From NCBI RefSeq assembly GCF_006345805.1, contig NC_043007.1, positions 5,952,001 through 6,016,000 of the forward strand: a DNA stretch of 64,000 nucleotides, written 5' to 3'. The notes beneath the pieces are model-generated. The model was not told where the DNA came from. It saw only the letters and a list, made by a program, of their open reading frames with translations, and did no database searches. This document shows, in pieces, positions 1-62,491 of the stretch; within the stretch, counting starts at the first letter, position 1, and each line of letters starts with the position of its first letter. The position numbers were made by a program, and so were the translations under genes. The stretch is from Octopus sinensis. Its lineage: Eukaryota.

Positions 1-462
1 ACCAGGCACATGCATCACAACCATATGTGCGCGACATGGTGATCTCATATCAAGATAAACAGCACATGACCTTGCAGGTGGGGCCCAGTTAGAATTTTCT
101 TCAGGTTGAGTAGCCCATCCCGCTCAAACGGTCCCTGAATAAGGGTTGTTTAAGGATGTTGAAAGAACCACCCATGTTTCCAGAGGTGAACTATTCAAAC
201 CCCAAAGAATCCCTCTCAACACATGGCTATGATGCTCCCCCACTACTTCTGCTCGTGATCAGAGATGCACATATCGTCAGCCACTAAGGGACATGCTCAA
301 CTGGTTAAGGTCAAACAACTGACAAGCAAATCTGTGGTATTGAGCAGAATATTTGCTGTAGCCCATCTTTTATACCAAGACAAAACAATGTACATGATAA
401 CACTTCCAATCAGTTAAGATCAGAAGCCATGTGAGCCACTGCCTGGTACTGCATCAGGGCAT
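1..462 (-). mobile_element. Element X copy 1 (non-coding retroposon in (AAT)n; its 3' end lies off the window)
   Basis: Near-identical to 39863-40418 and to the reverse complement of 9047-9515; bordered by an (ATT)n tract at 481-590. Confidence 0.85.
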
Positions 463-478
463 AATTCTGCCCTGATGC

Positions 479-612
<134 letters not shown>

Positions 613-7152: not shown

Positions 7153-7193
<41 letters not shown>

Positions 7194-7197
<4 letters not shown>

Positions 7198-9021
7198 GAG
7201 GGACTCATGAAAACCAAAGACATCCCCATTAGAAGAGGAATATTCCAGGGAGACACGCTCTCTCCACTCCTTTTCTGCTTGGCACTGTCACCTCTATCTG
7301 ATATGCTAAATAGAACTGGATGCGGATATAAATGTTACGGCAAAACGATCAGCCACCTTTTATATATGGATGACCTAAAACTATACGCTGCAAATGACAA
7401 ACAGCTGGAAACACTATTAAAGACAGTTCATGGATTTACCAAAGAAATAGATATGAAATTTGGATTAGAAAAATGCGCCAAAGTAACCATGAAAAGAGGA
7501 AATCTAGTTAAGAGTAACAACATCACACTAGATAAAACCAATGAAATAAAAGAATTAGACCAAAGCCAAACTTACAAATACTTAGGAATCCATGAACTAG
7601 ATAAGACACAACACACACAAATGAAAGAGAAAATAAAAAAAGAATATTATAGACGAGTTAGATCAATACTAAAAACAGAGCTCAATGCTAAAAACAAGAT
7701 AACAGGTATCAACACTTTAGCTGTCCCAGTTATAAGTTACAGCTACAATATCCTTAACTGGACACGAAATGAACTGTCCAAAATAGATAGGAAAACAAGA
7801 AAAATACTGACAGGATCTAGGATGCATCACCCAAAATCTGACATAGAAAGACTATATATACAACGTATAGAAGGTGGTAGAGGCCTTATACAGCTGGAAA
7901 ACTACTATAAAATAACCACCATAGGACTGCAAAAATACCTACTTCAGAAGGAAGGAAAACTGATCCAGATAGCAGCAAAACACGAGCAAAACAAAAACTG
8001 TTCTCAGTATTTAAGGAAGCTGACAAATACAAACAAGAAATCATACCACCTAATAAACACAAAGAAGAAGTAGAAGATGATGAAGAAACAACAAAAGCTA
8101 TAAAACAAATGAAATCCAAACTAAAAATAGAACAGCAACGAGCCATGATAAAACGATGGCAAGAAAAGCCCCTTCATGGTAAATACTGCACTAAACTAAA
8201 CGCAAAAGAAATAGACAAAGAAAAATCCCAGCAATGGTTGAGAAGCTCAGGACTCAAAGCAGAAACAGAGGGATTTTTAATTGCAGCACAAGACCAAAGC
8301 CTCCCCACCAGAAATTACCAAAAACATGTAATGAAAAGAAATATTACAAGTAACTGCAGAATATGTGGAGATGGACAAGAAACAATAAATCATATTATCT
8401 CTAGCTGCCCAGTCCCGGCTAAGAAGGAATATATTCACAGACATGACAGAGTTGGAACCTACATACATTGGAAGCTATGCCAACATTATGGAATAACAAC
8501 ACAAAAAAGATGTTATAGGCACACACCAGAAAAGGTCACAGAAAACGAGAAAGCAACCATACTCTGGGATATGCCGATACACACAGATAGAGAAATTAAG
8601 GCCAACAGACCAGATATAGTTGTCAGAGATCAGGAAGAAAAAAAATGCTTTCTAATTGATGTATCAATACCGGCAGATGACAACGTGTCTCTAAAAGAAA
8701 TGGAGAAACTCTCAAAATACAAAGACCTGGAAATAGAGGTAACTAGAATGTGGAACCTGAAAACAGAAACAATTCCTATCATAGTAGGTGCATTAGGCAT
8801 GATAAAAAAATATTCAGACAAATACATAACAAAAACACCAGGACTTACAAACACATATATCATACAGAAAATTGCACTACTAGGCACTGCACACATCCTA
8901 CGCAGAACACTTTCCATACAATAACCATCAGAGCATCACAACAAATCACAGCACATACCCAAGGCACACAGAGCTGCGCTCGGTAGTGAAGTGAAAGCAC
9001 GCTATAAAATTAAAACTACTG
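7194..9021 (+). mobile_element. Dong/R4 non-LTR retrotransposon family A, 5'-truncated
   Basis: ORFs 7207-8073 (FQGDTLSP, YMDD) and 8109-8924 (CCHC C-R-I-C..H..C; RPDIVV..D..K RLE), one frameshift; 3' UTR ends ACTACTG then (AAT)n; (AAT)n on both sides. Confidence 0.95.
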
Positions 9022-9046
9022 AACAATAATAATAATAATAATAATA

Positions 9047-9515
9047 ATAAAAAGATGGGCTACAGCAAATATTCTGCTCAATACCACAGATTTGCTTGTC
9101 AGTTGTTTGACCTTAACCAGTTGAGCATGTCCCTTAGTGGCTGACGATATGTACATCTCTGATCACGAGCAGAAGTAGTGGGGGAGCATCATAGCCATGT
9201 GTTGAGAGGGATTCTTTGAGGTTTGAATAATTCACCTCTGGAAACATGGGTGGTTCTTTCAACATCCTTAAACAACCCTTATTCAGGGACCGTTTGAGCG
9301 GGATGGGCTACTCAACCTGAAGAAAATTCTAACTGGGCCCCACCTTGCAAGGTCATGTGCTGTTTATCTTGATATGAGATCACCATGTCGCGCACATATG
9401 GTTGTGATGCATGTGCCTGGTGTACCCTTATCAGACGGGTAGTTATGATGGGTATATTGGGCTTCGTATATTTTACCCCAGTGTCACTTTGATGGCATGC
9501 ACTGCTCTCTCACTC
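9047..9515 (+). mobile_element. Element X copy 2, 5'-truncated by ~90 bp
   Basis: Reverse complement of 39863-40418 lacking its first ~90 nt; ends CTCTCTCACTC then (AAT)n. Confidence 0.85.
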
Positions 9516-9552
9516 AATAATAATAATAATAATAATAATAATGATAATAATG

Positions 9553-9583
<31 letters not shown>

Positions 9584-9600
9584 TAATAATGATAATAATG

Positions 9601-9667
<67 letters not shown>

Positions 9668-9704
9668 TAATAATGATAATAATAATAATGATAATAATAA
9701 TAAT

Positions 9705-9757
<53 letters not shown>
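9516..9757. repeat. (AAT)n/(GAT) microsatellite spacer
   Basis: Direct reading. Confidence 0.95.
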
Positions 9758-12700
9758 GCTCCCCACGAGCGAACCAAAGCTAAAAAATGATAACATTATC
9801 GTAGCACCAAAATGTTTTTGGAAACTAAAAGGAAAACTAAATCAGTATACCAAATCGCTTGTCCTATGGTTAATCTGGAAGCGCGTCCCCCAGGGAAGAG
9901 CCAGCCTGGGACCGAAAATCATCAACTGGCACAAACTCTTCTCCGAATACGGACATGGATGGTCACTTGAACGGGAAATCCCCCAACTCGAGCCCTCCAA
10001 GTTCACCACCACAACCACCACAGAAAGAAAAATGTAAGCGGAACAAATGGACCCGAGAAGAGTATAAAGAAGTAATATACGCTTATTACTATGCATTAGG
10101 TAGGCCATCTCAAGAGAGACACACCGCAAACTCTTACAGTATATGGAGAACACGGAATCAAGACAGTAGGCCCTATTTGGACGAGAACAAATTAGCAAAT
10201 GTGAGGAGGGATATCCTTAGAAATAACAGACTCACAGACAGTGAAATAAGCGCGATCAAGCACGCAACGGAAAATGACATAAATATAAGACACAAAGGAA
10301 ATGAAGAATCAGATGAACAGTATAGCCCGCCACGAGGCTTAATTGAAAGACTGCCATCTGACCAAAGTACGCAAAGGCCTGAAGATACAAGAAATTCTAT
10401 TATACCTGTTAAAGATAGCCAGGAAAACGAAAACACAACAGTAACTGAAGATCTCGCATTTGCTGAAGAACACAGAGAGTCTATGGCAGAAATGAGGCAG
10501 AAAATCCTGAATACACTTGAAGTTGTAAGACATACAAGTATGAATGATAGAGAACCACTTCATAAACTCTCAAATACAAACCAAAATAAAAAAACAAATC
10601 CAAATTGGCAACTATGTAACAAATGAAATAATACGAGAATTAAAACCTGATTTTACTGAGTTAAATGAAATTATTTACGCTTCTGCTAGGGCAATTGAAA
10701 CCAGCTGTATGCCCCCGAAAAAACAAAGAAAACAAAACCTGGGAAGAAATCAAACCTGGAGAAGTAAAATTGAAAAAGATTGAATTTATGAGAGGGGAAA
10801 TATCAATATTAAATGAACTAATATGTGGAAATGATGTAAGATCCAGAACAGGAAGAAAGATGAAGAGAAAATTTGGATCCTCACCAAGAGAAGAACTGAT
10901 ATCAATAAAAGAAACGCTGAAACAAAAAGTCCAAGCAAAAGCCCAAAGAATACGAAGATTTGAGAAGAGAAACAAGTTTTACAAGCAAAATAAGCTGTTC
11001 ACATCCAATGCCAAAAACTTCTACAGAGAAATAGGGAAGGAGAAAGTAACCGTTAAAGACCCCCCTCTCAAGGAAGAAGTTCAAAACTTTTGGAAAAGTA
11101 TTTGGAGTGACAAGAAGACGTACAAAATAAATGCAGACTGGATTATACAAACTGAAGGATCCTACCAAAATTTACAACAACAAGCATGGGAAGACATCAC
11201 AATAACAGACCTAAGAAAGGCACTCACGAAGGCCCATAATTGGAAATCCCCCGGTAAAGATAGGGTGCCGAATTTCTGGCTCGCATCGCTCCCATGCGCA
11301 CACGGTAAGCTAGTTCAGCTGCTCAATGGAATTATGAGAGACCCAAAGAAAACACCTGAATGGTTAGCAAGTGGCATTACTTACCTACTCCCAAAGAATA
11401 ACGAAACCAACCTTCCAAAAAACTATCGGCCTATAACCTGTCTATCCACCACGTATAAAATCCTAACATCTATCCTGGCGGAGAAAACATATGCATTCAT
11501 GGAGAAGAACGATATTTTCCCCATTGAACATAAAGGGTGCCGCCGAGGCTCTTACGGATGCAAAGATCAACTGCTAATCAATCGTATGATCCTTGAGAAC
11601 TGTCACAACAAGCGCAGAAATCTCAGCACCGCATGGATTGACTATAAAAAGGCCTTCGACAGTATACCGCATCCATGGATCTTGAGATCGCTGGACATCT
11701 TCAAAATTTCCCCTGTGATTTCAAACTTCCTGAAGCACAATATGTCGTTGTGGAATACGAATCTCCAATTATACCACTCTAATGGAGTACTTGCCTCAGA
11801 AAATATAAACATCAACTGTGGAATTTTTCAAGGTGACTCACTTTCACCTTTAATATTCTGCATAGCCCTAATACCCCTTACAAGTGAATTAAACAGAACA
11901 GGGTATGGGTATAAAATTGCCAATAAAAAAATAAGCCATCTATTTTATATGGATGACTTAAAACTTTATGGTAAAAAACAATAATGAACTTGAAGGCCTA
12001 TTGTGCACTGTGAAAGCATTCAGCGATGACATCGGGATGGAGTTTGGACTTGAGAAGTGTGCCAAGGCCACTTTCCAGAAAGGGAAAGTGAAGACCACAA
12101 ATTCAGTCGTGTTAGATGTTGACACAGTCATAAGTGAGCTTGAGCAAGAACAAACATACAAATATTTAGGGATAAATGAAGGCTCTGGTATTCAGCATGC
12201 AAGCATGAAAGAGAAGATCAGGTAGGAATGTTATAGGAGAGTTCGTGCAGTCCTGAAATCTGAACTAAATGCACGTAACAAGGTGTTAGCTATAAATTCC
12301 TTAGCAGTTCCAGTTGTTACTTATAGCTACAATGTGTTGAACTGGAATATGAGTGAAGTAAAGAATATAGATAGAAAAATACGCAAGCTGCTGAGTTGTA
12401 ATAGGATGCACCACCCAAAGGCAGACGTAGATCGCCTTTACCTTCCCAGAGCCCAAGGAGGTCGAGACCTGATCCAATTTGAACTAGCTTACAAAACAAC
12501 CACAATTGGACTGGCCAAATATCTCGAAATATCGAATGACTGGATGCTAAAGCTCGTGGACAATCACGAGAGATGAAAGAAGCTTCATTCTATTATAAAG
12601 GAAAGCAAAAAATTTGCTATTGATCTCGTGCAGGATACCCAAACAGAACAACCCGAGGGAAGTACGGCAATTATTGTTGCAAAGAAGGTGAAAATAATGG

Positions 12701-13535
12701 CAACGAAAAGAGCGCACGAGCAATTGGCTGATAGGTGGGAGGAGAAACCTCTGCACGGCAAATATGTGACCCGCAGCAAACAAGCTGATGTTGACCAGAA
12801 GCAAACCCATCAGTGGCTACGGAGCTCAGGGCTAAAAGCAGAGAGCGAAGGTTTCATCCTGGCTGCTCAAGATCAAAGCCTATTAACCCGGAACTACCAG
12901 GCCAATGTGATGAAAAATGGAGCACACCCAAAATGCCGATTCTGCAACGACATGATTGAAACAGTGGACCACCTAATCTCTGGATGTAAAGTCTTAGCAC
13001 CAGTGGAGTATAAATTAAGACATGACAGAGTTGGCCAATATCTCCACTGGCTAATAAGTCGGCATTACAATATCAAAACTGCCGACAAGTGGTATAATCA
13101 CCACCCTGAGGCTGTAACTGAAGGAGAAAATGTAACCATTCTGTGGGACTTTCCAGTACATACAGACCGAACCATCAAGGCCAATAAACCAGATATTGTT
13201 GTGAAAGACCAAAACAATAAAGTTTGCTTATTGATCGACATGAGCATCCCCTGTGATCATAATATCTCAGCGAAAGAGTTTGACAAGCTCAGAAAATATA
13301 AAGACCTACTCATTGAAATTGAGAAAATGTGGCATCTCAAGGCGGTTACAATACCAGTGATCGTAGGAGCACTAGGAATGATCAAGAAGGGAACCGAAAA
13401 TTATATGAGAATGATCCCTGGCTTACCATCCCTGCAAGAAGTGCAAAAGATTGTCTTAACTGGTACATCACACGTATTGAGAAGAGCATTGTCGATGTGA
13501 GAACTGTTGCTGCTCATGTATTTTAATTTAACTTT
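9758..13535 (+). mobile_element. Dong/R4 family B, full-length or nearly so, single ORF broken by 2 frameshifts and 2 stops
   Basis: N-terminal KRNKWTREEYKEV motif; RT (WKSPGKD, NYRPITCL, WIDYKKAFDS, FQGDSLSP, YMDD); CCHC; KPDIVV..D..K RLE; ORF pieces 9955-13500; (AAT)n on both sides. Confidence 0.95.
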
Positions 13536-13705
<170 letters not shown>

Positions 13706-14028
13706 GGGGCTGATAGCTACCTAACTCAGATACCAGGAAACCCCAAAATGGCAGAAGTTCAAAAGATAGTGCTCATGGGAACTGCTCATATCCTATGCAA
13801 AATACTCTCTATGTAATCTCAAGGTTTAAAACAAACATAATTTTCGGTTTAAAAAAAAAAAAAAAATTTTTTTTTTTTAGACATTCATTAGTACAACATC
13901 CCCACCCCCCAAATATATGGCACACTAGGCATAACAACAACATGAACTTCCAACCCTGTTGTCTCTTGAGGTCTCTGGGTGAGACTTGGAGCCAACTTGT
14001 ACAAATATAAAGCAAAAGTCAAACATAG
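13706..14028 (+). mobile_element. Dong/R4 family C, short 3'-end copy
   Basis: Encodes ..YLTQIPGNPKMAEVQKIVLMGTAHILCKILSM* then ~215-bp 3' UTR and (AAT)n; matches the 3' end of 60922-62326. Confidence 0.85.
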
Positions 14029-17720: not shown

Positions 17721-19974
17721 AGCCAGAGACAATGCCTGAATGGCTCACGAAGGGGAAAACCATCTTAATTCCCAAATCAAATGAAACAGAAAAACCAGAA
17801 AACTACAGACCAATAACCTGCCTCCCTACTATGTTCAAGGCATTTACTGCAGTGATATCGCAAAGGCTGAACAAGCACCTGGACGAAAACAAACTGTTCC
17901 CAGAAGAGCAGAAAGGATGCCGCAAGGGCTCATATGGCTGTAAAGATCAACTAATGATTAATAAAGCCATAACTGAAGACAGCCACAGAAAGAAGAAAGG
18001 CCTCAGTATGGCCTGGATAGACTACAAAAAGGCGTTTGATAGCATCCCCCACACATGGATCCTCGAAACACTAGCCATTAACAAAGTAGCACCAACAATC
18101 ATAAAATTCATAGAGCACTCTATGATAAATGGCAAACAGTCCTACACACACCTCCAAACAAAAGAGGGACTCATGAAAACCAAAGACATCCCCATTAGAA
18201 GAGGAATATTCCAGGGAGACACGCTCTCTCCACTCCTTTTCTGCTTGGCACTGTCACCTCTATCTGATATGCTAAATAGAACTTGATGCGGATATAAATG
18301 TTACGGCAAAACGATCAGCCACCTTTTATATATGGATGACCTAAAACTATACGCTGCAAATGACAAACAGCTGGAAACACTATTAAAGACAGTCATGGAT
18401 TTACCAAAGAATATATATGAAATTTGGATTAGAAAAAATGCGCCAAAGTAACCATGAAAGAGGAAAACTAGTTAAGAGTAACAACATCACACTAGATAAA
18501 ACCAATGAAATAAAAGAATTAGACCAAAGCCCAACTTACAAATACTTAGGAATCCATGAACTAGATAAGACACAACACACACAAATGAAAGAGAAAATAA
18601 AAAAGAATATTATAGACGAGTTAGATCAATACTAAAAACAGAGCTCAATGCTAAAACAAGATAATAGGTATCAACACTTTAGCTGTCCCAGTTATACGTT
18701 ACAGCTACAATATCCTTAACTGGACACGAAAATGAACTGTCCAAAATAGATAGGAAAACAAGAAAAATACTGACAGGATCTAGGATGCATCACCTAAAAT
18801 CTGACATAGAAAGACTATATATACAACGTATAGAAGGTGGGTAGAGGCCTTATACAGCTGGAAAACTACTATAAAATAACCACCATAGGACTGCAAAATA
18901 CCTACTTCAGAAGGAAGGAAAACTGATCCAGATAGCAGCAAAACACGAGCAAAACAAAAAAACTGTTCTCAGTATTTAAGGAAGCTGACAAATACAAACA
19001 AGAAATCATACCACCTAATAAACACAAAGAAGAAGAAGAAGATGAAGAAACAACAAAAGCTATAAACAAATGAAATCCAAACTAAAAATATAACAGCAAC
19101 GAGCCATGATAAAACGATGGCAAGAAAAGCCCCTTCATGGTAAATACTGCACTAAACTAAACGCAAAAAATAGACAAAGAAAAATCCCAGCAATGGTTGA
19201 GAAGCTCAGGACTCAAAGCAAGAAACAGAGGGATTTTTAATTGCAGCACAAGACCAAAGCCTCCCCACCAGAAATTACCAAAAAATGTAATGAAAAGAAA
19301 TATTACAAGTAACTGCAGAATAGTGGAGATGGACAAGAAACAATAAATCATATTATCTCTAGCTGCCCAGTCCTGGCTAAGAAGGAATATATTCACAGAC
19401 ATGACGAGTTGGACCTACATACATTGGAAGCTATGCCAACATTATGGAATAACAACAGAAAAAAGATGGTATAGGCAAACACCAGAAAAGGTCACAGAAA
19501 ACGAGAAAAGCACCATACTCTGGGATATGCCGATACACACAGATAGAGAAATTAAGGCCAACAGACCAGATATAGTTGTCAGAGATCATGAAGAAAAAAA
19601 ATGCTTTCTACTTGATGTATCAATACCGGCAGATGACAACGTGTCTCTAAAAGAAATGGAGAAACTCTCAAAATACAAAGACCTGGAAATAGAGATAACT
19701 AGAATGTGGAATCTGAAAACAGAAACATTCCTATCATAGTAGGTGCATTAGGCATGATAAAAAATATTCAGACAATACATAACAAAAAACACCAGGACTT
19801 ACAAACACATATAACATACAGAAAATTGCACTTACTAAGCACTGCACACATCTACGCAGAACATTTCCATAAAATAAACATCAGAGCATCACAACGAATC
19901 ACAGCACATACCCAAGGCACACAGAGCTGCGCTCGGTAGTGAACTGAAAGCACGCTATAAAAATAAAACTACTG
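17721..19974 (+). mobile_element. Dong/R4 family A, 5'-truncated
   Basis: Near-identical to 7194-9021 plus more RT (ORF 17732-18286); same 3' end; many 1-bp indels. Confidence 0.95.
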
Positions 19975-20426: not shown

Positions 20427-23400
20427 TGTAAGAACCGGGGACATTTAAGATGTAAGAGACCGGGGACGTTTAAGATGTAAGAAGGAAAATTCAGATCTCC
20501 GAAATTCTATCCACAAACATCGAAACAAGACATCCTATGGAGCCAAGTTTTACTAACAAAGAATTGGACTGTATCCGAGTAAGTAATACTAATTGAAATT
20601 TATTACTATTTTCGAAACGAAATGATGTATTTTGACTCGATATCATCTCCGCCTCTAACGCAACACATGTAAACATGCGTAAGTAATACTAATTGAAATT
20701 TATTACTATTTTCGAAACGAAATGATGTATTTTGACTCGATATCATATCCGCCTCTAACGCAAACATGTAACCATGCGTGGAACATCACGATCATCTCCG
20801 ACCCCAAACACCATACAAGGAACTACGAAGAAATTAAATGCCACCGATACTATTCAACCCAAGAATAAACAATCGAGCGGTACGTACATTAAACTTACAA
20901 CAAAAAATGTACGAAAATTACACGTGCGAAATAATGTGACAACAGAAATAAACGGACCGGTACCCTACGAAAATGACGACCGTCAAAATAATGGGCCGGA
21001 CGTTGTACCTCATGTCCCGCAAATAAATAAAACCAAAAGAACGTAAATGGACACGTGAGGAATACATTTCTATCTTACACGCATACTTCACAGCAGTACT
21101 CTACCCGAAAAATGAAAATAAAATACAACAACACTACATATAAAATATGGAAGGAAAATAATAGAGATATAGACTTGGATACAGCAATGAACCCTAATAA
21201 ATTAGCTAACGTACGAAGATACATTCTCAACACAAAAAAATATCAGAAATAGAAATAGAACACCTAAAAGAAAATATACACGAGGAAAATGTAGATAGAA
21301 GCCACACAACAATGCCCAATAATATAAACACGAAACTGGAAACACGAAGACAAACGCAAAATTCCCAACAAACACGATGTAAACAACGAAGGGAGCCTAA
21401 TGATTATGATAATATAAAAATTAAAATAATCAAAGAACTGAAAACACAGAGCTCAAAATTGACCACCGACCATACCTCCCAAGAATCAAAATAAACAAAA
21501 TAACAACATCTATTATAAACAGCATAAACCTAGCCGTCACTGAACTAGCCACTGAAACAAAAAAAAAGTGATATCACTGAAGTAAAAATGACTTGATATA
21601 CGCAGCAGCCACTGCAGACAAAAGAAGAGGATACTCACCCAACCCGCCCAAACAGGAGTACCACCACCCAAACAAAACCTGTGGATAAATAACATCCAAG
21701 CAAAATAAAAAAATTAGAAAAGACCTGTCGATTCTTAATGAAATCAGCAAACATCAACGCTACTGAGCAACAAAAAGAGAACAAAAATACTCCGCAAATA
21801 TAACATCACAGAGAAAGATTTGCCTGAAATAAAAGAAAAGCTGAAGAAAGATGTCCTTGCCAAAGCACAAAGGATCCGCCGGTACGAGAAACGCCAACGC
21901 TTCTTTGAACAGAACAAAAAGTTCAACTCTAACCCCAAAAAGTTCTACCAAGAACTGGGAAAAACTAAAAAAGAAGTCACTGCAGCACCAACGGCAGAAG
22001 AATTGGAAGAATTCTGGGGAGAAATATGGTCGGCGAACGAACCACGAAGAAAAAGGAGTATCAGAATAACAAACTCGGCATCTGAACAACTTTGGACCCC
22101 CATAACAACTGAAGAGGTCACCCAGGCACTGCAAAAAACTAAGCAACTGGAAGGCACCTGGACATGACAAGATCCCCAACTTCTGGTTGAAAATATCTAC
22201 CAGGAATGCACAAAAAGCTGGCTGAAAAACTTAACAAAGTACTAGCAGAGCCAGAGACAATGCCTGAATGGCTCACGAAGGGGAAAACCATCTTAATTCC
22301 CAAATCAAATGAAACAACAAAACCAGAAAACTACAGACCAATAACCTGCCTCCCTACTATGTTCAAGGCATTTACTGCAGTGATATCACAAAGGCTGAAC
22401 AAGCACCTGGACGAAAACAAACTGTTCCCAGAAGAGCAGAAAGGATGCCGCAAAGGCTCATATGGCTGTAAAGATCAACTAATGATTAATAAAGCCATAA
22501 CTGAAGACAGCCACAGAAAGAAGAAAGGCCTCAGTATGGCCTGGATTGACTACAAAAAGGCGTTTGATAGCATCCCCCCACACATGGATGCTCGAAACAC
22601 TAGCCATTAACAAAGTAGCACCAACAATCATAAAATTCATAGAGCACTCTATGAATAAATGGCAAACAGTCCTACCACCTCCAAACAAAAGAGGGACTCA
22701 TGAAAATCAAAGACATCCCCATTTAGAAGAGGAATATTCCAGGGAGACACGCTCTCCACTCCTTTTCTGCTTGGCACTGTCACCTCTATCTGATATGCTA
22801 AATAGAACTTGATGCGGATATAAATGTTACGGCAAAACGATCAGCCACCTTTTATATATGGATGACCTAAAACTATACGCTGCAAATGACAAACAGCTGG
22901 AAAACACTATTAAAGTCAGTTCATGGATTTACCAAAGAATAGATATGAAATTTGGATTAGAAAAATGCGCCAAAGTAACCATGAAAAGAGGAAAACTAGT
23001 TAAGAGTAACAACATCACACTAGATAAAACCAATGAATAAAAGAATTAGACCAAAGCCAAACTTACAAATACTTAGGAATCCATGAACTAGATAAGACAC
23101 AACACACACAAATGAAAGAGAAAATTAAAAAAGAATATTATAGACGAGTTAGATCAATACTAAAAACAGAGCTCAATGATAAAAACAAGATAATAGGTAT
23201 CAACACTTTAGCTGTCCCAGTTATAAGTTACAGCTACAATATCCTTAACTGGACACGAAATGAACTGTCCAATAGATAGGAAAACAAGAAAAATAATGAG
23301 GATCTAGGATGCATCACCCAAAATCTGACATAGAAAGACTATATATACAACGTATAGAAGGTGGTAGAGGCCTTATACAGCTGGAACACTACTATAAAAT

Positions 23401-24518
23401 AACCACCATAGGATTGCAAAAATATCTACTTCAGAAGGAAGGAAAACTGATCCAGATAGCGGCAAAACACGAGCAAAACAAAAAACTGTTCTCAGTATTT
23501 AAGGAAGCTGACAAATACAAACAAGAAATCATACCACCTAATAAACATGAAGAAGAAGAAGAAGATAATGAAGAAACAACAAAAGCTATAAAACAAATGA
23601 AATCCAAACTAAAAATATAACAGCAACGAGCCATGATAAAACGATGGCAAGAAAAGCCCCTTCATGGTAAATACTGCACTAAACTAAACGCAAAAGAAAT
23701 AGACAAAGAAAAATCCCAGCAATGGTTGAGAAGCTCAGGACTCAAAGCAGAAACAGAGGGATTTTTAATTGCAGCACAAGACCAAAGCCTCCCCACCAGA
23801 AATTACCAAAAACATGTAATGAAAAGAAATATTACAAGTAACTGCAGAATATGTGGAGATGGACAAGAAACAATAAATCATATTATCTCTAGCTGCCCAG
23901 AAGGAATATATTCTGGCTAAGAAGGAATATATTCAGAGACATGAAAGTGTTGGAACCTACATACATTGGAAGCTATGCCAACATTATGGAATAACAACAG
24001 AAAAAAGATGGTATAGGCACACACCAGAAAAGGTCACAGAAAACGAGAAAGCAACCATACTCTGGGATATGCCGATACACACAGATAGAGAAATTAAGGC
24101 CAACAGACCAGATATAGTTGTCAGAGATCAGGAAGAAAAAAAATGCTTTCTAATTGATATATCAATACCGGCAGATGACAACGTGTCTCTAAAATAAAAG
24201 AAGGAGAAACTCTCAAAATACAAAGACCTGAAATAGAGGTAACTAGAATGTGAATCTGAAAACAGAAACAATTCCTATCATAGTAGGTGCATTAGGCAGA
24301 TAAAAAAATATTCAGACAAATACATAACAAAAAACACCAGGACTTACAAAACATATAAAACATACAGAAAATTGCACTACTAGGCACTGCACACAACCTA
24401 CGCAGAACACTTTCCATATAATAACCATCAGAGCATCACAACAAATCACAGCACATACCCAAGGCACACAGAGCTGCGCTCGGTAGTGAAGTGAAAGCAC
24501 GCTATAAAAATAAAACTA

Positions 24519-24521
<3 letters not shown>
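20427..24521 (+). mobile_element. Dong/R4 family A, apparently full-length (~4.1 kb), fragmented by indels
   Basis: 5' UTR; N-terminal KRT(R)KWTREEY and NPNKLANVRRYIL motifs as in family B; RT, CCHC and RLE; family A 3' end plus (AAT)n. Confidence 0.92.
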
Positions 24522-25025: not shown

Positions 25026-25475
25026 AATCAGAAAATACCTGCAGACTAATAGAAGTAAGCGTCCCCACTGATATAAATGTAAAATGTTATCTGTCAAGGA
25101 ATTTGACAAACTTAGTAACTATAAGGACCTGGAAATCGAAATACAGAGGGATGTGGAATCTTAAAACAAAAACTGTTCCTGTTATTGTAGGTGCCCTAGG
25201 TATGATAAAAAAGGGATGTCAGAAACAACTAGACAATATCCCTGGAAAACCATGTCTCAAGGAAATCCAAAAGAGTGTGCTAACAAGTACTGCCCACATC
25301 CTTAGAAAAACCCTATCAATGTAAATGTTTGTGTTTGTATTACATGAGATATATCTCTACTTCCCCTCCCCAAGCTTTCAGCTATATTTCAGCAACTCTT
25401 AACCTTCACTTGCCTAGGGCGCTGGGTGTGCCCCGGCAGGTGATGCTCAAACACGCAGATTAAAAAGTAAATGAC
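25026..25475 (+). mobile_element. Dong/R4 family E, short 3'-end copy
   Basis: KEFDKLSNYKDLEIE, MWNLKTKTVPVIVGALGMIKKG..TAHILRKTLSM*; distinct 3' UTR then (AAT)n. Confidence 0.85.
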
Positions 25476-36219: not shown

Positions 36220-36589
36220 CATTATTATTATCATTATATTATTATCATTCTTATCATTATTATATATTATATATCATAGTATCAGATTATTATTATTATC
36301 ATTATTATTATTATTATTATTATTATCATTATTATTATTGTTATATTATCATCTTATTATTATTATTATTATTATATTATTATTATTATTATCATTTAGT
36401 ATTATCAGAGTAGTATCATTCATTATTAGTATTATATTATATTATTATTGATATTATTATTATTATCAATTATTATCATTATTATTATTATCATTATTAT
36501 TATTATATCATTATCATTATATTATAGATTTATTTTATTATTATTATCATTTATTATCATTATTATTATTATCATTATTATCATTATCA

Positions 36590-36629
<40 letters not shown>

Positions 36630-37204
36630 GTATCATTATTATTATCATTATTATTATTATCATTATTATCATTAGTATTATTATTATTAATATCATTATT
36701 ATTATTATTATTATTATCATTATTATCATTATTATTATTATCATTATTATATTAGGATTATTTATCATTATTATATTGTTATTATTATCATTATTATTTA
36801 TTATTATTATTATTATTATTATCAGTTATTATTCAGTATTAGTATTATCATTATTATCATTATCATCATTATTATTATTATTATTATTATTATATCATTA
36901 TTATTATTATCATTATTATTATCATTATTATTATTATCATTATTATTATATTATTATTATATATCATATTATTATCATTATTTATTATCATTATTATTAT
37001 TATTATATATTATTATTATGATTATTATTATCATTATTATTATTATTATATTTATTATTATTAATTCATTATTATTATTTATTATTATTATTATTATCAT
37101 CATTATATTATTATTATTATTATATCATCATTATATATGTATTATTATTATTATCATCATATTATTATTATTATTATATTATCATTATTATTATTATTAT
37201 TATT
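35310..37204. repeat. ~1.9-kb (TTC)n then degenerate (ATT/ATC)n array
   Basis: Direct reading; abuts the 3' end of the minus-strand Dong copy. Confidence 0.92.
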
Positions 37205-39510
37205 CAGTAGTTTTATTTTATTTTTATAGCGTGCTTTCACTTCACTACCGAGCAGCGCTCTGTGTGCCTGGGTATGTGCTGTGATTTGTTCTGATGCTCT
37301 GATGGTTATTGTATGGAAAGTGTTCTGCGGTAGGATGTGTGGCAGTGCCTAGTAGTGCAATTTTCTGTATGTTATATGTGTTTGTAAGTCCTGGTGTTTT
37401 TGTTATGTATTTGTCTGAATATTTTTTTATCATGCCTAATGCACCTACTATGATAGGAATTGTTTTGTTTCAGATTCCACATTCTAGTTACCTCTATTTC
37501 CAGGTCTTTGTATTTTGAGAGTTTCTCCATTTCTTTTAGAGGACACGTTGTCATCTGCCGGTACTGATACATCAATTAGAAAGCATTTTTTTTCTTCATG
37601 GTCTCTGACAACTATATCTGGTCTGTTGCCTTAATTCTCTATCTGTGTGTATCGGCATATCCCAGAGTATGGTTGCTTTTCGTTTTCTGTGACCTTTCTG
37701 GTGTGTGCCTATACCATCTTTTCTGTTGTATTCGATAATGTTGGCATAGCTTCCATGTATGTAAGTTCCAACTCTGTCATGTCTGTGAATATATTCCTTT
37801 AGCCAGGACTGGGCAGCTAGAGATAATATGATTATTGTTTCTTGTCCATCTCCACATATTCTGCAGTTACTTGTAATATTTCTTTTCATTACATGTTTTT
37901 GGTAATTTTGGTGGGGAGGCTTGGTCTTGTGCTGCAATTTAAATATCCCCTGGTTCTGCTTTGAGTCCTGAGCGTCTCAAAATTGCTGGGATTTTCTTTG
38001 TCTATTTCTTTTGAGTTTAGTTTAGTCCAGTATTTACCATGAAGAGGCTTTTCTTGATCGTTTTATCATGGTTCGTTGCTGTTCTATTTTTAGTTTGGAT
38101 TCATTGGTTTTATAGCTTTTGTTGTTTCTTCATCTCTTATTCTTCTCTTCATGTTTATTAGGTGGTATGATTTCTTGTTTGTATTGTCAGCTTCCTTAAA
38201 TACGAGTTTCCTTCCTTCTGAAGTAGATATTTTGCAGTGTCCTATGGTGGTTATTTTATAGTAGTTTTCCAGCTGTATAAGGCCTCTACCACCTTCTATA
38301 CGTTGTATATATAGTCTTTCTATGTCAGATTTTGGGTGATGCATCCTAGATCCTGTCATTATTTTTCTTGTTTTCCTGTCTATTTTGGTCAGTTCATTTC
38401 GTGTCCAGTTAAGGATATTGTAGCTGTAACTTATAACTGGGACAGCTAAAGTGTTGATACCTATTATCTTGTTTTTAGCATTGAGCTCTGTGTTTAGTAT
38501 TGATCTAACTCGTCTATAATATTCTTTTTTTATTTTCTCTTTCATTTGTGTGTGTGTTTGTCTTATCTAGTTCATGGATTCCTAAGTATTTGTAAGTTGG
38601 GCTTGGTTAATTCTTTTATTTCATTGGTTTTATCTAGTGTGATGTTGTTACTCTAACTAGTTTTCCTCTTTTCATGGTACTTTGGCGCATTTTTCTAATC
38701 CAAATTTCATATTATTTCTTTGGTAAATCCATGAACTGTCTTTAATAGGGTTTCTAGATGTTTGTCATTTGCAGCGTATAGTTTTAGGTCATCCATATAT
38801 AAAAGGTGGCTGATCGTTTTGCCGTCCCCACCGTAACATTTATATCCGCATCCAGTTCTACTTAGCATATCAGATAAGAGGTGACAGTGCCAAGCAGAAA
38901 AGGAGAGGAGAGAGCGTATCTCCCTGGAATATTCCTCTTCTAATGGGGATGTCTTTGGTTTTCATGAGTCCCTCTTTCATGAGTCCCTCTTTTGTTGGAG
39001 GTGTAGGACTGTTTGCCATTTATTCATAGAGTGCTCTATGAATTTTATGATTGTTGGTGCTACTTTGTTAATGGCTAGTGTTTCGAGGATCCATGTGTGG
39101 GGGATGCTATCAAACGCCTTTTTGTAGTCAATCCAGGCCATACTGAGGCCTTTCTTCTTCTGTGGCTGTCTTCAGTTATGGCTTTATTAATCATTAGTTG
39201 ATCTTTACAGCCATATGAGCCTTTGCGGCATCCTTTCTGCTCTTCTGGGAACAGTTTGTATTCGTCCAGGTGCTTGTTCAGCCTTGTGATATCACTGCAG
39301 TAAATGCCTTGAACATAGTAGGGAGGCAGGTTATTGGTCTGTAGTTTTCTGGTTTTGTTTGTTTCATTTGATTTGGGAATTAAGATGGTTTTCCCCTTCG
39401 TGAGCCATTCAGGCATTGTCTCTGGCTCTGCTAGTACGTTGTTAAAGTTTTCAGCCATCTTTTTGTGCATTCCTGTTAGATATTTCACCAGAAGTTGGAG
39501 ATCTTGTCAT
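37205..39510 (-). mobile_element. Dong/R4 family A, 5'-truncated
   Basis: Reverse complement of family A from DKIPNFW through RT, CCHC, RLE and 3' UTR; (ATT)n on both sides. Confidence 0.93.
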
Positions 39511-39599
39511 TATTTATTATTATTTTATTATTATTATTATATTATTATATATTATTATTATATTATTATTATTATTATATTATTATTATCATTATTATT

Positions 39600-39630
<31 letters not shown>

Positions 39631-39812
39631 TATTATTATCATTATCATTATCAGCATTATTATTATTATTATCATTATTATTACTATTATTATCATTATT
39701 ATCATTATTATTATTATTATTATTATTACTATTATTATTATTATCATTATTATTATTACTATTATTATCATCATCATTATTATTATTATTATTATTGTCA
39801 TTATCATTATTA

Positions 39813-39862
<50 letters not shown>
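39511..39862. repeat. (ATT/ATC)n spacer
   Basis: Direct reading. Confidence 0.92.
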
Positions 39863-40416
39863 GAGTGAGAGAGCAGTGCATGCCATCAAAGTGACACTGG
39901 GGTAAAATATACGAAGCCCAATATACCCATCATGACTACCCGTCTGATAAGGGTACACCAGGCACATGCATCACAACCATATGTGCGCGACATGGTGATC
40001 TCATATCAAGATAAACAGCGCATGAGCTTACAGGTGAGGCCCAGTTAGAATTTTCTTCAGGTTGAGTAGCCCATCCCGCTCAAAAGGTCCCTGAATAAGG
40101 GTTGTTTAAGGATGTTGAAAGAACCACCCATGTTTCCAGAGGTGAATTATTCAAACCCCAAAGAATCGCTCTCAACACATGGCTATGATGCTCCCCCACT
40201 ACTTCTGCTCGTGATCAGAGATGCACATATCGTCAGCCACTAAGGGACATGCTCAACAGGTTAAGGTCAAACAACTGACAAGCAAATCTGTGGTATTGAG
40301 CAGAATATTTGCTGTAGCCCATCTTTTATACCAAGACAAAACAACGTACATGATAACACTTCCAATCAGTTAAGATCAGAAGCCATGAGAGCCACTGCCT
40401 GGTACTGCATCAGGGC

Positions 40417-40418
<2 letters not shown>
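39863..40418 (-). mobile_element. Element X copy 3, full-length (~556 bp), non-coding
   Basis: Flanked on both sides by (ATT)n; same 5' end as copy 1 and same 3' end as copy 2; no TIRs and no meaningful ORF. Confidence 0.88.
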
Positions 40419-40449
<31 letters not shown>

Positions 40450-40789
40450 CATTATTATTATTATTATTATTACTATTTCAATAAAAACAGGGGCAGTTGC
40501 TCCGAGCTTTAATATAGGTCATTCAGGTGACAGTGCCGACGTTTCGGTTTCCATAACTGTTAAACAGAACATAACCCAAAGAGCTTGCCAAGGGAAGTAG
40601 CCATCGGATTGGCTTAAAAGTCCGTTTGCTTGTTGTGGACCTTAAACATGAAGCACTCAAATAAATAACTGATTTCTGTCTGTCCCTTGCACAAGAACAC
40701 TTGTTAGATTCGGGATACTTCAGCGTTGTACAACGGGAACTTGAAACGAAACAGATTGTGTTTTTGTGTGCTTGGGTCACCCTGAAAAT

Positions 40790-41737: not shown

Positions 41738-41790
41738 TAATTTTAGAGCTCACTTTTTTGTGATTTATGAAATAAGATGATATCCGTGCA

Positions 41791-42779
41791 AGTCGCATTG
41801 TTGGGTTTTAGTTGTGGGTCCGTTCATGCAATGATTGGACTGAATGTGTGTTTGAGTAGTGTTTATACAGTGTTTTGTTAAGAGCGTAAAATGTGAAGTG
41901 GGGAAAAGGAACACTAAAACTAGAGGTATGAAAACCCGTCAAGAAAAGAATTGATGCCTGTCTGAAAAATGAATTCTGACAGAGAGTCCTCTCTACTGTA
42001 GACACAGAATCTACTCAGAAATATGGTAGAGACGGGAACTTATCGACGCTCAACTGGAAGTTATTTCCTTGACACTAAGAAGATAAAAGGCAAAGTCAAC
42101 CTCTGTGGATACCCAGAAGGAACAGACGGACGAAATGCCGTCAATCATTTTGTTCGGTGCGCTCACGATTCTGCCAGCATGCAATAATAATAATGCATTT
42201 TACTATAAGGCACAAGACCCGAAATTACGGAGAAGCGGTGTAGTCGATCACATCAGTTCCAGTGCTAACTAGAAGTTCTTTCCCCCCACTGAAAGAATTA
42301 AGAAAACTCGGCCTCGGTGGTGTTTGAACTCAGAACGTACAACAGAGAATATGCTGCTAAATGATTTTTATCCCGGGGGCTGCTGACGATTCTGCCAACA
42401 CCCCGCGTTACAGTTCTGACATCAGACCCCTTCGTAGTTCTGACAGTTAATAAATTATCTCTGGAATAAAAGGATTTGTAAATGAAAATGAATGAAGGAA
42501 AAAAATGCAGAGAAATACGTAAAGGAGCGCAGGACTCAGTATAGAGAAAGAAGGACTAGGAGAGAGTACAATATAAGAATATATAACAACAGAACACATT
42601 GCCTACATACACTTTACTTGTTCGGGTGAAAAGAAAACACGGAATGAAAATAGGAACATTGAAAAGAAGATATAACACTTTATTGTTTATTGTTCATATA
42701 TATATGAACAACAAATATATATATTTAATTGTATATGTACATATACATATATATATACATAATTTAATTGTATATGTAC

Positions 42780-42852
<73 letters not shown>

Positions 42853-42895
42853 GATATATATATACATATATATATATTCATATATATATATAATA

Positions 42896-42928
<33 letters not shown>

Positions 42929-62405: not shown

Positions 62406-62407
<2 letters not shown>

Positions 62408-62491
62408 ATAGTCTTATTTTTACCAAGTGCTTTCACTGAACAACGGAGTGCAGCTCTGGGTGCCTTGGGTATATGCTGTGGTTTGTTGTGA
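62406..62491 (-). mobile_element. Family A-related Dong 3' UTR stub (~85 bp)
   Basis: CACAACAAACCACAGCATATACCCAAGGCACCCAGAGCTGCACTCCG..GTGAAAGCAC..ACTATTG-(AAT)n aligns with the family A 3' end. Confidence 0.8.

What the first reader, a model, noticed from the sequence alone, without database searches (positions are those of the whole stretch)
39863..40418. Element X: a 556-bp non-coding retroposon that appears to parasitise Dong's (AAT)n-targeting machinery
Seen: three near-identical copies (1-462, 9047-9515, 39863-40418), each bordered by AAT-type tracts at every end visible in the window, with AAT on the same strand as for Dong. Two copies sit inside Dong trains in the same orientation as their neighbours. 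The 3' end is fixed (CTCTCTCACTC-AAT); one copy is 5'-truncated with microhomology and one has a 5' fold-back. There is no ORF, TIR or recognisable tRNA/5S/7SL head or A/B box, and no primary-sequence match to the Dong ends here. Established: non-autonomous partners of site-specific R2/R4-group elements (SIDE-type) exist. Inference: X is a sequence-specific non-autonomous element mobilised in trans by a Dong/R4 RT-RLE, with an unknown promoter or processing route. I cannot tell whether it already has a library name.
Basis: partly seen in the sequence, partly recalled or inferred. Interest (0 to 1): 0.8.

Follow-up and report, generated by a model that had tools for sequence, protein, structure and literature searches.

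The report
Octopus retroposon inserting into AAT repeats
Element X is a real, abundant, non-coding "copy-and-paste" repeat of octopus genomes that lands in AAT microsatellites, the same targets as the Dong LINEs beside it; it most likely borrows their enzyme, which makes it an undescribed example of a known kind of genomic parasite-of-a-parasite.

Summary
The window has three copies of a ~556-bp non-coding element, 97.6-99.2% identical. They share a fixed 3' end (…CTCTCTCACTC) followed by (AAT)n, have AAT-type tracts at every visible end, and sit in the same orientation as neighbouring Dong-type LINEs. One copy is 5'-truncated at a microhomology and one has a 13-bp 5' snap-back.

A six-frame protein search placed X in Octopus. 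Another 100 kb from O. bimaculoides and O. sinensis holds four more independent insertions. One is full length with the same 5' end (ATGCCCTGATGCAG). Three are 5'-truncated to 203, 148 and 39 bp. All are followed by (AAT)8 or more.

The three short copies lack AAT on their 5' side. Their AAT tract is instead the (ATT)n tail of an older, inverted SINE-like repeat, so the tract was there before X arrived: it is a target, not only X's own tail.

X has no ORF, Pfam, Rfam, tRNA or TIR signal, and carries three T4 runs that argue against Pol III. It shows no similarity to the UTRs of the Dong families in the window, so it is not a SIDE of any of them.

Mobilisation by Dong-R4 is therefore inferred from shared target, strand, junction and truncation pattern, not shown. 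Verdict: new member of a known kind; moderate interest.

The parts
39863..40418 (-). X3: full-length copy of element X (556 bp; sense strand is the window minus strand; 5' ATGCCCTGATGCAG ... CTCTCTCACTC 3')
39509..39862 (-). AAT-rich tract (with GAT/AGT variants) immediately 3' of X3, running into a 5'-truncated Dong A
40419..40477 (-). about (AAT)20 immediately 5' of X3, bounded by unique DNA: the upstream remainder of the target tract
1..462 (-). X1: copy of X cut by the window start (its 3' end lies outside); same 5' terminus as X3
463..480 (-). 5' snap-back of X1: 13-nt inverted copy of X's first bases plus a loop
481..596 (-). (TAA)18(AAT)17 tract 5' of X1
9050..9515 (+). X2: 5'-truncated copy (X positions 92-556) joined to the tract at a TAAAA microhomology
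9027..9049 (+). short (AAT)7 between the Dong A 3' end and X2
9516..9757 (+). (AAT)n tract 3' of X2, ending at the 5' end of Dong B
20428..24521 (+). Dong A, full-length reference copy (candidate autonomous partner family), flanked by AAT tracts
7191..9026 (+). Dong A, 5'-truncated copy upstream of X2 (RVT_1, zf-RVT)
17721..19974 (+). Dong A, 5'-truncated copy
37216..39510 (-). Dong A, 5'-truncated copy downstream of X3 in the same orientation
9758..13550 (+). Dong B: starts GCTCCCC directly after (AAT)n; RVT_1; CCHC plus KPD...D...K restriction-like endonuclease; frame-broken
13706..14028 (+). Dong E: 3' fragment of another Dong-like family, inserted in the tail of Dong B
25029..25475 (+). 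Dong C: 3' fragment of a further Dong-like family, lying between two AAT tracts
62406..62491 (-). 86-bp Dong A 3' fragment with (AAT)20 on its 3' side and unique DNA on its 5' side: the same flank pattern as the short X copies

Best explanation
X is a non-autonomous non-LTR retroposon family of Octopus that integrates by target-primed reverse transcription at (AAT)n microsatellites. It most likely uses the reverse transcriptase and restriction-like endonuclease of the co-resident Dong-R4 LINEs.

Proposed mechanism:
1. X RNA ends in ...CUCACUC, probably followed by some (AAU)n. It is made by Pol II or by read-through, not by Pol III.
2. The Dong protein nicks the (ATT)n strand of an AAT tract.
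3. The freed ...ATT-3'OH primes cDNA synthesis at X's 3' end. This fixes both the 3' junction and the orientation relative to the tract.
4. Synthesis often stops early, giving 5' truncation.
5. The 5' junction is then closed by microhomology (X2) or after cDNA snap-back (X1). For short copies this step often loses the upstream remainder of the tract.
6. Each new copy carries or keeps an AAT tract that serves as the next target, which builds the Dong/X trains.

Shown: the family, its truncation polarity, the fixed 3' end, the shared 5' end, AAT tracts that existed before insertion, co-orientation with Dong, the absence of coding capacity and of Pol III features, and the absence of Dong-derived ends.

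Inferred: Dong as the enzyme source, tail-to-target annealing as the basis of template choice, and the route of transcription and 5'-end formation.
For: (1) Family and polarity. There are 7 independent insertions: window X1-X3; O. bimaculoides L002 17344-17896 (full length), L002 9748-9951 (203 bp) and L003 5016-5163 (148 bp); and O. sinensis L004 18181-18219 (39 bp), which is orthologous to L002 19360-19400. All truncations are at the same end. All 6 visible 3' ends are ...CTCTCTC(ACTC)|(AAT)>=8.

(2) Discrete unit. Three independent full-length copies start at ATGCCCTGATGCAG and have different flanks.

(3) AAT is the target, not only a tail.
- 4 of 7 insertions have AAT on the 5' side as well.
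- In the other three, the tract is the (ATT)n tail of an inverted SINE-like repeat 'S' (S-(ATT)n-rcX).
- S carries an (ATT)7 tail on its own at L002 18971-19140.
- The three host S copies have visibly different 3' ends (...CCGATAGCAGGAAGG...CCTATAGTGCAAAGG...TCTTTAGTAGAAAGG), and other S copies in these loci are only 69-75% identical to the L003 one. The X parts are 92-97% identical to the window's X.

(4) Same behaviour as Dong.
- Same tracts and same strand.
- A ...C|AAT junction for X, Dong A and Dong C.
- X sits inside Dong trains in the same orientation.
- A short Dong A fragment at 62406-62491 also lacks AAT on its 5' side.

(5) The neighbours are RLE LINEs of Dong type: RVT_1, a CCHC plus KPD..D..K motif, R2 proteins as the only PDB matches (E 0.18-0.24), and the GCTCCCC start also seen in B. 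mori Dong (PMC3774820).

(6) Literature context. Dong targets (TAA)n in insects and a snail (PMC3812793, PMC7998251). Dong-R4 accounts for 1129 recently active LINE insertions in O. vulgaris, more than any other LINE group listed there (PMC13282606).

(7) The 3' UTRs of Dong A, C and E share nothing detectable with each other. The only common 3' feature of the elements using these targets is therefore the AAT repeat, which X also has.

(8) Not Pol III. The sense strand has T4 runs at positions 78, 334 and 512, and there is no tRNA, 5S, 7SL or snRNA match.
Against: - There is no direct evidence that a Dong protein acts on X.
- There is no sequence or predicted-structure similarity between X's 3' end and any Dong 3' UTR available. 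R2 and R1, the best-studied site-specific relatives, are 'stringent' and need their own 3' UTR (PMC3414825).
- Three of seven copies have no AAT at the 5' flank, and their tails are a uniform 8-13 units. That is also what an element with its own AAT tail would show.
- The sample is small (about 163 kb, 7 events) and two loci were reached through a gene model containing X.
- Petrosino et al. found no sign of recent Dong activity in O. bimaculoides (PMC9115989).
- No promoter or ribozyme that would explain X's exact 5' end was found.
Confidence: 0.6

Rival explanations
1. X is an ordinary SINE-like retroposon that carries its own (AAT)n tail and is mobilised by a LINE that is not site-specific (for example an RTE, CR1 or L2-type element). 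On this reading the link with AAT tracts and Dong trains is secondary. X brings the tract, Dong elements later insert into X's tail, and microsatellite expansion does the rest.
For: - The three short copies in O. bimaculoides and O. sinensis have unique 5' flanks and tails of 8, 10 and at least 13 units.
- The full-length L002 copy has only 3 AAT units upstream and 9 downstream.
- X shares no sequence with any Dong end.
- RTE is the LINE with evidence of current activity in octopus (PMC9115989).
Against: - Three of four non-window insertions sit exactly on the (ATT)n tail of an older inverted SINE-like repeat. Such tails are a minute fraction of the genome (AAT tracts make up about 0.3-0.4% of L002 and L003), so integration is directed to existing AAT/ATT tracts.
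- X3 has about 20 AAT units upstream, bounded by unique DNA.
- X2 lies between a Dong A 3' end and a long tract.
- No LINE with an X-like 3' end occurs in the 163 kb examined.
Confidence: 0.15
2. X is a derivative of an autonomous element that is not present in this window. It could be a short internally deleted element (SIDE), or the detached 5' and 3' ends of another Dong-R4 family whose UTRs match X. It would then be recognised through a shared 3' UTR in the classical 'stringent' way.
For: - SIDEs of R2 and R1 have exactly this logic (PMC3414825).
- O. vulgaris has at least five recently active Dong-R4 families (PMC13282606), and not all need be in the window.
- X has a precise 5' end, as ribozyme-processed Dong and R2 RNAs do (PMC3774820).
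Against: - No similarity to the 3' UTRs of Dong A, B, C, E or the 5' UTRs of A, B.
- No longer element containing X was seen in 163 kb.
- No HDV-like fold was found in X. That test was uninformative, because it also missed Dong A and B.
Confidence: 0.12
3. The three copies are products of segmental duplication or misassembly of one AAT-flanked sequence, and not of transposition.
For: The copies are 97.6-99.2% identical within 64 kb, in a repeat-rich region that is hard to assemble.
Against: - The flanks, neighbours and tract variant patterns differ.
- The three 5' ends differ in structure: full length, truncated, and snap-back.
- Further copies with different truncation points occur in two other assemblies and species, and one is orthologous between species.
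Confidence: 0.01

Closest known systems
R2 SIDEs and R2/R1 hybrid SIDEs of Drosophila (Eickbush & Eickbush 2012, PMC3414825)
   Same: Non-coding and non-autonomous. They insert at the same specific target as a site-specific LINE, in the same orientation, by TPRT. Their 5' junctions vary.
   Different: SIDEs are built from the partner's own 5' ribozyme and 3' UTR. X shares no detectable sequence with any Dong end available. The SIDE target is rDNA, whereas X's target is a microsatellite. SIDEs are rare, whereas X is abundant.
SINEU-3 of crocodilians and its Tx1-Mar partner (Kojima 2015, PMC4494074)
   Same: A non-autonomous retroposon that shares the target preference of a sequence-specific LINE. 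Its transcription possibly depends on flanking sequence rather than on a promoter of its own.
   Different: SINEU has a U1/U2 snRNA-derived head and its partner is an APE-type Tx1 LINE. X has no recognisable small-RNA head, and the candidate partner is an RLE-type Dong.
Dong / R4-clade LINEs (B. mori Dong, DongAg, DongBg; octopus Dong-R4)
   Same: Same (TAA)n/(AAT)n target, same strand, the same ...C|AAT type of junction, the same 5'-truncation behaviour, and formation of trains.
   Different: Dong is 4-5 kb and encodes RT plus RLE. X is 556 bp, has no ORF, and has no sequence in common with Dong.
LP-SINEs of molluscs and SVA-like Pol II retroposons (Matetovici et al. 2016, PMC4758252)
   Same: Short non-autonomous retroposons without a Pol III small-RNA head. 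They end in tandem repeats and are presumably Pol II transcripts.
   Different: LP-SINE heads are visibly derived from a LINE 5' end, and no microsatellite target specificity is reported for them. X's head matches nothing available here.
Alu/L1 and UnaSINE1/UnaL2 (tail-dependent template choice)
   Same: In these pairs the repeat at the RNA 3' end (poly-A, or short tandem repeats) is the feature that the RT or the primer uses. This is the step proposed for X's (AAU)n.
   Different: Those partners are APE LINEs without microsatellite target specificity. For Dong, dependence on the tail is a hypothesis.

Membership tests
Non-LTR retroposon (TPRT product) | Fixed 3' end with variable 5' truncation among copies | tested here: met
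   Copies of 556, 553, 465, 203, 148 and 39 bp all end at ...CTCTCTC(ACTC). All truncations are at the other end.
Non-LTR retroposon (TPRT product) | Simple-repeat or A-rich tract directly after the 3' end; no LTR or TIR | tested here: met
   (AAT)>=8 follows all 6 visible 3' ends. There is no TIR.
Non-autonomous element | No coding capacity for RT or endonuclease | tested here: met
   The longest ORF inside X is 50 aa. There is no Pfam hit in six frames. The only protein-database hit is an octopus gene model that has exonised an X copy.
Classical SINE | 5' head derived from tRNA, 5S, 7SL or snRNA with an internal Pol III promoter | tested here: not met
   ARAGORN finds nothing. Rfam finds nothing at E<=10 or at gathering threshold. 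No A/B box was found by inspection. Three T4 terminator runs lie in the sense strand.
Classical SINE | 3' tail shared with a partner LINE | tested here: not met
   No similarity to the 3' UTRs of Dong A, B, C or E. Other octopus LINE families could not be searched.
SIDE (short internally deleted element of a site-specific LINE) | 3' end is the 3' UTR of the autonomous partner | tested here: not met
   Smith-Waterman scores against the Dong A, B, C and E 3' UTRs fall within the shuffle distribution (p 0.28-0.95). This covers only the families present in the window.
SIDE (short internally deleted element of a site-specific LINE) | 5' end carries the partner's HDV-like self-cleaving ribozyme | tested here: inconclusive
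   No Rfam ribozyme family matches. My own HDV-like descriptor finds nothing in X, but it also finds nothing in the 5' ends of Dong A and B, which should be positive controls.
Sequence-specific ((AAT)n-targeting) retroposon | Target sequence present before insertion, on both sides or demonstrably older than the insert | tested here: met
   AAT lies on both sides in 4 of 7 insertions. In the other 3 the tract is the (ATT)n tail of an inverted SINE-like repeat whose three host copies differ clearly from one another. A clean empty site could not be obtained.
Sequence-specific ((AAT)n-targeting) retroposon | Constant orientation relative to the repeat strand | tested here: met
   All 7 insertions read AAT, not ATT, on X's sense strand.
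Dong / R4-clade LINE (the neighbours, candidate partner) | Single-ORF LINE with RT followed by CCHC and a restriction-like endonuclease, and no APE domain | tested here: met
   RVT_1 in Dong A and B. CRFC..H..C and KPDIVV..IDMSIP..K..KY in Dong B. The only PDB matches are R2 proteins, aligned over these motifs, but weakly (E 0.18).
Dong / R4-clade LINE (the neighbours, candidate partner) | Insertion in (TAA)n microsatellites in one orientation | tested here: met
   Every Dong A, B, C and E copy is followed by (AAT)n, and all but the 86-bp fragment at 62406-62491 also have AAT-type repeats upstream.
Dong / R4-clade LINE (the neighbours, candidate partner) | Phylogenetic placement of the RT within the R4 clade | not tested
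   No reference R4, Dong, R2, NeSL or HERO sequences were available. Support is indirect: the GCTCCCC 5' start matches B. mori Dong (PMC3774820), and Dong-R4 is reported as abundant in octopus (PMC13282606, PMC8967140).
Trans-mobilisation by Dong | Dong protein reverse-transcribes and integrates X RNA | not testable with these tools
   Circumstantial only: shared target, strand, junction and truncation pattern.

The most novel reading that the evidence does not exclude
X is mobilised by an RLE-type, site-specific LINE (Dong-R4) with no partner-derived sequence at all, purely because its RNA ends in the target repeat (AAU)n. That would be a 'relaxed', tail/target-homology mode of template choice, in a LINE group otherwise thought to be stringent. 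X's exact 5' end would be made by an unrecognised processing motif or by an internal Pol II promoter. On this reading any transcript ending in (AAU)n could be copied into AAT microsatellites. That would help explain the octopus-specific explosion of unclassified SINE families and of AAT tracts.
Probability: 0.3. Interest if true: 0.65.

Novelty: new member of a known kind. Interest (0 to 1): 0.45.

Why it matters
Octopus genomes stand out for their SINE content: about 11.6% of O. vulgaris is SINE, with 893 recently active families left 'unclassified' (PMC13282606). It is not known which LINEs drive them.

X is a concrete, well-delimited case that links one abundant, long-lived non-coding family to the (AAT)n-targeting Dong-R4 LINEs. 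The family is older than the O. bimaculoides / O. sinensis split, and copies in the window are still about 98-99% identical.

If the partnership is real, three things follow:
- The list of non-autonomous parasites of site-specific LINEs grows from rDNA and transposon targets (R2 SIDEs, SINEU-3) to microsatellite targets.
- A self-reinforcing mechanism explains both the growth of AAT tracts and the element 'trains'.
- A natural system becomes available to ask whether an RLE LINE can choose templates by tail homology alone. That question bears on current attempts to use R2-type proteins for targeted insertion.

X insertion into the tails of older SINEs, and its exonisation in a gene model, also show that it affects annotation.

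Tried and rejected
- Exact-match scans of JGI metagenome contigs with two conserved X 22/23-mers: 0 hits.
- Protein search with the Dong B RT: only relatives at 73% identity or less (59% for the best full-length hits), from other animals. The source genome's TE ORFs are therefore not in the protein collection. Locus L001, obtained this way, comes from an unrelated organism. It has Dong trains in (AAT)n but no X. Its 463-bp AAT-flanked insert looks, by eye, like an antisense coding fragment of another TE rather than an X analogue (not tested further).
- The third protein search was run with too strict an E-value and returned only one further usable octopus protein.
- The representative-library search returned only giant sushi-domain proteins of unknown taxa, which were useless for fetching more octopus DNA.
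- An empty-site comparison for the L002 9748 copy against O. sinensis failed. The region carries a different SINE subfamily, about 300 bp of extra DNA and a MITE-like insertion.
- HDV-like ribozyme descriptor, strict and relaxed versions: nothing in X, but also nothing in the 5' ends of Dong A and B, so the test has no power. Rfam does not see a ribozyme in the Dong B 5' end either.
- Comparison of predicted 3' hairpins of X and Dong A, B, C: no common motif. Only Dong C is clearly structured.
- Whole-X fold: z = -2.7, with a long internal stem that is broken in the 90%-identical old copy. This was not pursued.
- 'X is a decayed coding fragment': rejected by Pfam in six frames.
- 'S-(ATT)n-rcX is one composite SINE': rejected. 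The rcX part would then be 3'-truncated at variable points, full-length X copies lack S, and the S parts look much more diverged than the X parts.
- ARAGORN and Rfam do not classify the S repeat as tRNA-derived, so I call it only 'SINE-like'.
Full report
**1. What is in the window**

The window is AT-rich (about 35% G+C) and full of simple repeats.

blastn with 39863-40418 finds three copies of X and no more:
- 39863-40418 (556 bp);
- 1-462 (97.8%, cut by the window start);
- 9050-9515 (97.6%, opposite strand).

In a MAFFT alignment X1 and X2 are 99.2% identical.

GCACTGCTCTCTCACTC 3'. The flanks, read directly, are as follows.
- X3: unique DNA, about (AAT)20, X, a 354-bp AAT-rich tract, then a 5'-truncated Dong A in the same orientation.
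- X2: Dong A 3' end, (AAT)7, X starting at position 92 at a TAAAA microhomology, a 242-bp (AAT)n tract, then Dong B in the same orientation.
- X1: (TAA)18(AAT)17, a 13-nt inverted copy of X's own start plus a 6-nt loop, then X from its normal first base.

The tracts downstream of X2 and X3 differ in their pattern of GAT/AGT variants, and the neighbours differ. The copies are therefore separate insertions. Period-3 AAT-type tracts cover about 7% of the window, so three hits in such tracts on one strand is far from chance.

**2. The neighbours are Dong-type LINEs**

Self-comparison and Pfam define these elements:
- Dong A: one full-length copy at 20428-24521, 5'-truncated copies at 7191-9026, 17721-19974 and 37216-39510(-), and an 86-bp fragment at 62406-62491(-).
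- Dong B: 9758-13550.
- 3' fragments of two more families: C at 25029-25475 and E at 13706-14028.

Dong B has RVT_1 and a C-terminal CRFC..H..C motif followed by KPDIVV..IDMSIP..K..KY. Its only PDB matches are R2 retrotransposon proteins, aligned over exactly these motifs, though weakly (E 0.18 and 0.24).

Dong B begins GCTCCCC directly after the AAT tract. B. mori Dong begins GCTCCC, and its HDV-like ribozyme cleaves a (TAA)n co-transcript at that junction (PMC3774820). Dong is the established (TAA)n-specific R4-clade LINE in insects and in a snail (PMC3812793, PMC7998251). Dong-R4 accounts for 1129 recently active LINE insertions in O. vulgaris, the largest count among the LINE groups listed (PMC13282606).

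I did not run an RT phylogeny, so 'R4 clade' rests on these features.

**3. X has no function-bearing features of its own**

- No ORF above 50 aa.
- No Pfam match in six frames.
- No tRNA.
- No Rfam family, at gathering threshold over the window or at E<=10 around X.
- No TIR.
- Three T4 runs in the sense strand, at positions 78, 334 and 512. These would stop Pol III.
- Smith-Waterman scores of X against all of Dong A and B, against the 3' UTRs of A, B, C, E, and against the 5' UTRs of A, B all lie inside the shuffle distributions.
- Predicted 3'-terminal folds show no common hairpin.

**4. Finding X elsewhere**

The decisive step was to search the six-frame translation of X against the protein collection. 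The single hit, UniRef A0A0L8FVA6 of Octopus bimaculoides, starts with 31 residues that are 30/31 identical to the small antisense ORF at window 39932-40048. An X copy has been annotated as the first exon of that gene model.

This identifies the window as Octopus. The species was not determined.

It also gave access to more DNA:
- 70 kb of O. bimaculoides chromosome CM046623.1 (L002 and L003);
- 29 kb of the orthologous O. sinensis contig (L004).

blastn and nhmmer with alignment find the following.
- L002 17344-17896 is a full-length copy, 90% identical to the window's X, with the same first bases.
  - It has three AAT units upstream and (AAT)9 downstream.
  - Its decayed orthologue, L004 16094-16381, is 87.5% identical to it. 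The insertion therefore predates the split of the two species.
- L002 9748-9951 (203 bp), L003 5016-5163 (148 bp, 96.6%) and L004 18181-18219 (39 bp, orthologous to L002 19360-19400) are all 5'-truncated. All end in CTCTCTC(A/G)CTC, followed by (AAT)10, (AAT)8 and (AAT)>=13.
- An older fragment of X positions 99-273, about 77% identical and without AAT, is conserved in both species.

In total there are 7 independent insertions in about 163 kb.

**5. Target or tail?**

The three short copies have unique DNA on their 5' side. That could mean the AAT tract is merely X's own tail.

In all three, however, the tract is followed by the reverse complement of an abundant SINE-like repeat, which I call S. 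S ends ...AAATTCCAGGCCTTGTGCCTATAGTAGAAAGG. The structure is S-(ATT)n-rcX, tail to tail.

Several observations indicate that S and its tail came first:
- S occurs with its own (ATT)7 tail and no X at L002 18971-19140.
- The three host S copies have clearly different 3' ends, and other S copies in these loci are only 69-75% identical to the L003 one. The X parts are 92-97% identical to the young window copies.
- AAT tracts make up only 0.3-0.4% of these loci.

X therefore integrated into tracts that were already there, on the strand where they read AAT. Together with the four copies that have AAT on both sides, this supports real (AAT)n targeting.

The loss of the upstream remainder in short copies is mirrored by the 86-bp Dong A fragment at 62406-62491. 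I attribute it, by inference, to resection when a truncated cDNA is joined to the upstream DNA by microhomology. I could not obtain a clean empty site.

**6. Mechanism and partner**

The polarity of truncation, the fixed 3' junction, the snap-back and the microhomology junction are the signatures of target-primed reverse transcription.

The only elements in these sequences known to nick (TAA)n, and found in the same tracts, on the same strand and with the same ...C|AAT junction, are the Dong LINEs. The 3' UTRs of Dong A, C and E are unrelated to each other. The one 3' feature common to everything that uses these targets is thus the AAT repeat itself.

My best explanation (confidence 0.6) is that Dong RT-RLE copies X RNA, primed by the nicked (ATT)n strand, and that an (AAU)n end on the RNA provides the match.

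How X RNA is made, and how its exact 5' end arises, is unknown. That end is shared by three independent copies. Pol III is unlikely. No known ribozyme family matches. My HDV-like descriptor was uninformative, because it also failed on Dong A and B.

**7. Comparison with known systems**

X works like the R2 and R2/R1 SIDEs (PMC3414825) and like SINEU-3 with Tx1-Mar (PMC4494074). These are non-autonomous elements that inherit the target of a site-specific LINE.

X is not a SIDE of any Dong family I could test, and it is not a classical SINE, because it has no Pol III head. Like the mollusc LP-SINEs (PMC4758252) it is probably a Pol II or read-through transcript.

I found no paper describing a non-autonomous partner of Dong, or of any microsatellite-specific LINE. 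Repbase and Dfam could not be queried, and a family this abundant is surely in automated octopus repeat libraries, perhaps among the 893 'unclassified SINE' families of PMC13282606.

I therefore rate it a new member of a known kind, with moderate interest (0.45).

**8. Limits**

- The sample outside the window is small and was reached through a gene model containing X.
- The species of the window was not determined.
- The partner is inferred.
- The main rivals remain open at about 0.15 and 0.12:
  - X carries its own AAT tail and is mobilised by a non-specific LINE;
  - X derives from an unseen Dong family.

Noticed in passing
window 39932-40048 (+); L002 9748-9951: The small ORF antisense to X (MTTRLIRVHQAHASQPYVRDMVISYQDKQRM...) forms the first 31 residues of an O. 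bimaculoides gene model (UniRef A0A0L8FVA6, 'Sushi, von Willebrand factor type A, EGF and pentraxin domain-containing protein 1'). An X copy just upstream of that gene has been exonised or mis-annotated. The newer NCBI model XP_014786617.2 is 13 residues shorter (642 vs 655 aa).
   Followed up: partly
L002 9560-9951; L003 5016-5395; L004 17990-18219: There is a recurrent tail-to-tail arrangement: a SINE-like repeat 'S' (B-box-like GAGTTCAAATTCC, ending ...AGAAAGG) with an (ATT)n tail, followed by an inverted 5'-truncated X. No ATT is left beyond X in any of the three cases, which suggests either a preferred nick at the distal end of the tract or loss of the remainder during 5' joining.
   Followed up: partly
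window 7191-14028 and 17476-25924: Element trains all lie on one strand and are separated only by AAT tracts: Dong A - X2 - Dong B - Dong E, and Dong A - Dong A (full length) - Dong C. At least four, possibly five, Dong-like families occur in 64 kb; a further B-like RT lies at about 61327-62323(-).
   Followed up: partly
window 20426-20483 and 20579-20779: The 5' UTR of the full-length Dong A has a 25-nt unit (ATGTAAGAACCGGGGACATTTAAG) repeated 2.4 times at its very start, and a 100-bp unit duplicated in tandem at 97% identity. Its start (GTAAGAACCGGGG) differs from the GCTCCCC start of Dong B.
   Followed up: no
window 35502-37227: A 1.7-kb degenerate (TTA)n tract (77% matches) lies 3' of the minus-strand Dong A. 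It is far longer than the tails seen in gene-rich octopus loci (8-20 units) and suggests tract growth inside trains.
   Followed up: no
L002 28402-28560; L004 24787-24944: An older fragment corresponding to X positions 99-273 (about 77-79% identical) has no AAT flanks. It is conserved at orthologous positions in O. bimaculoides and O. sinensis within an intron. It may be an older relative of X, or the source of X's central part.
   Followed up: no
window 3883-6314 vs 41787-44146: A large inverted pair of another repeat (79-97% identical over about 2.4 kb) lies 35 kb apart and brackets the Dong/X region. It was not classified.
   Followed up: no
L001 2341-17818 (ENA ERZ25066843, unknown organism): An unrelated organism (Dong RT about 59% identical in protein) shows the same Dong trains in (AAT)n. 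One Dong copy there ends ...CATTGAAC|AAT, like octopus Dong A. A 1.15-kb segment flanked by AAT on both sides (16602-17749) has an internal ~180-nt duplication and only one short called ORF (69 aa, running into the downstream AAT tract); it could be another non-autonomous passenger.
   Followed up: no
window 39863-40418 (-): X RNA folds more stably than shuffles (MFE -183 kcal/mol, z = -2.7, 0 of 100 shuffles as stable). It has a long internal stem between about 218-243 and about 425-450. The stem is disrupted in the 90%-identical old copy, so its significance is unclear.
   Followed up: partly
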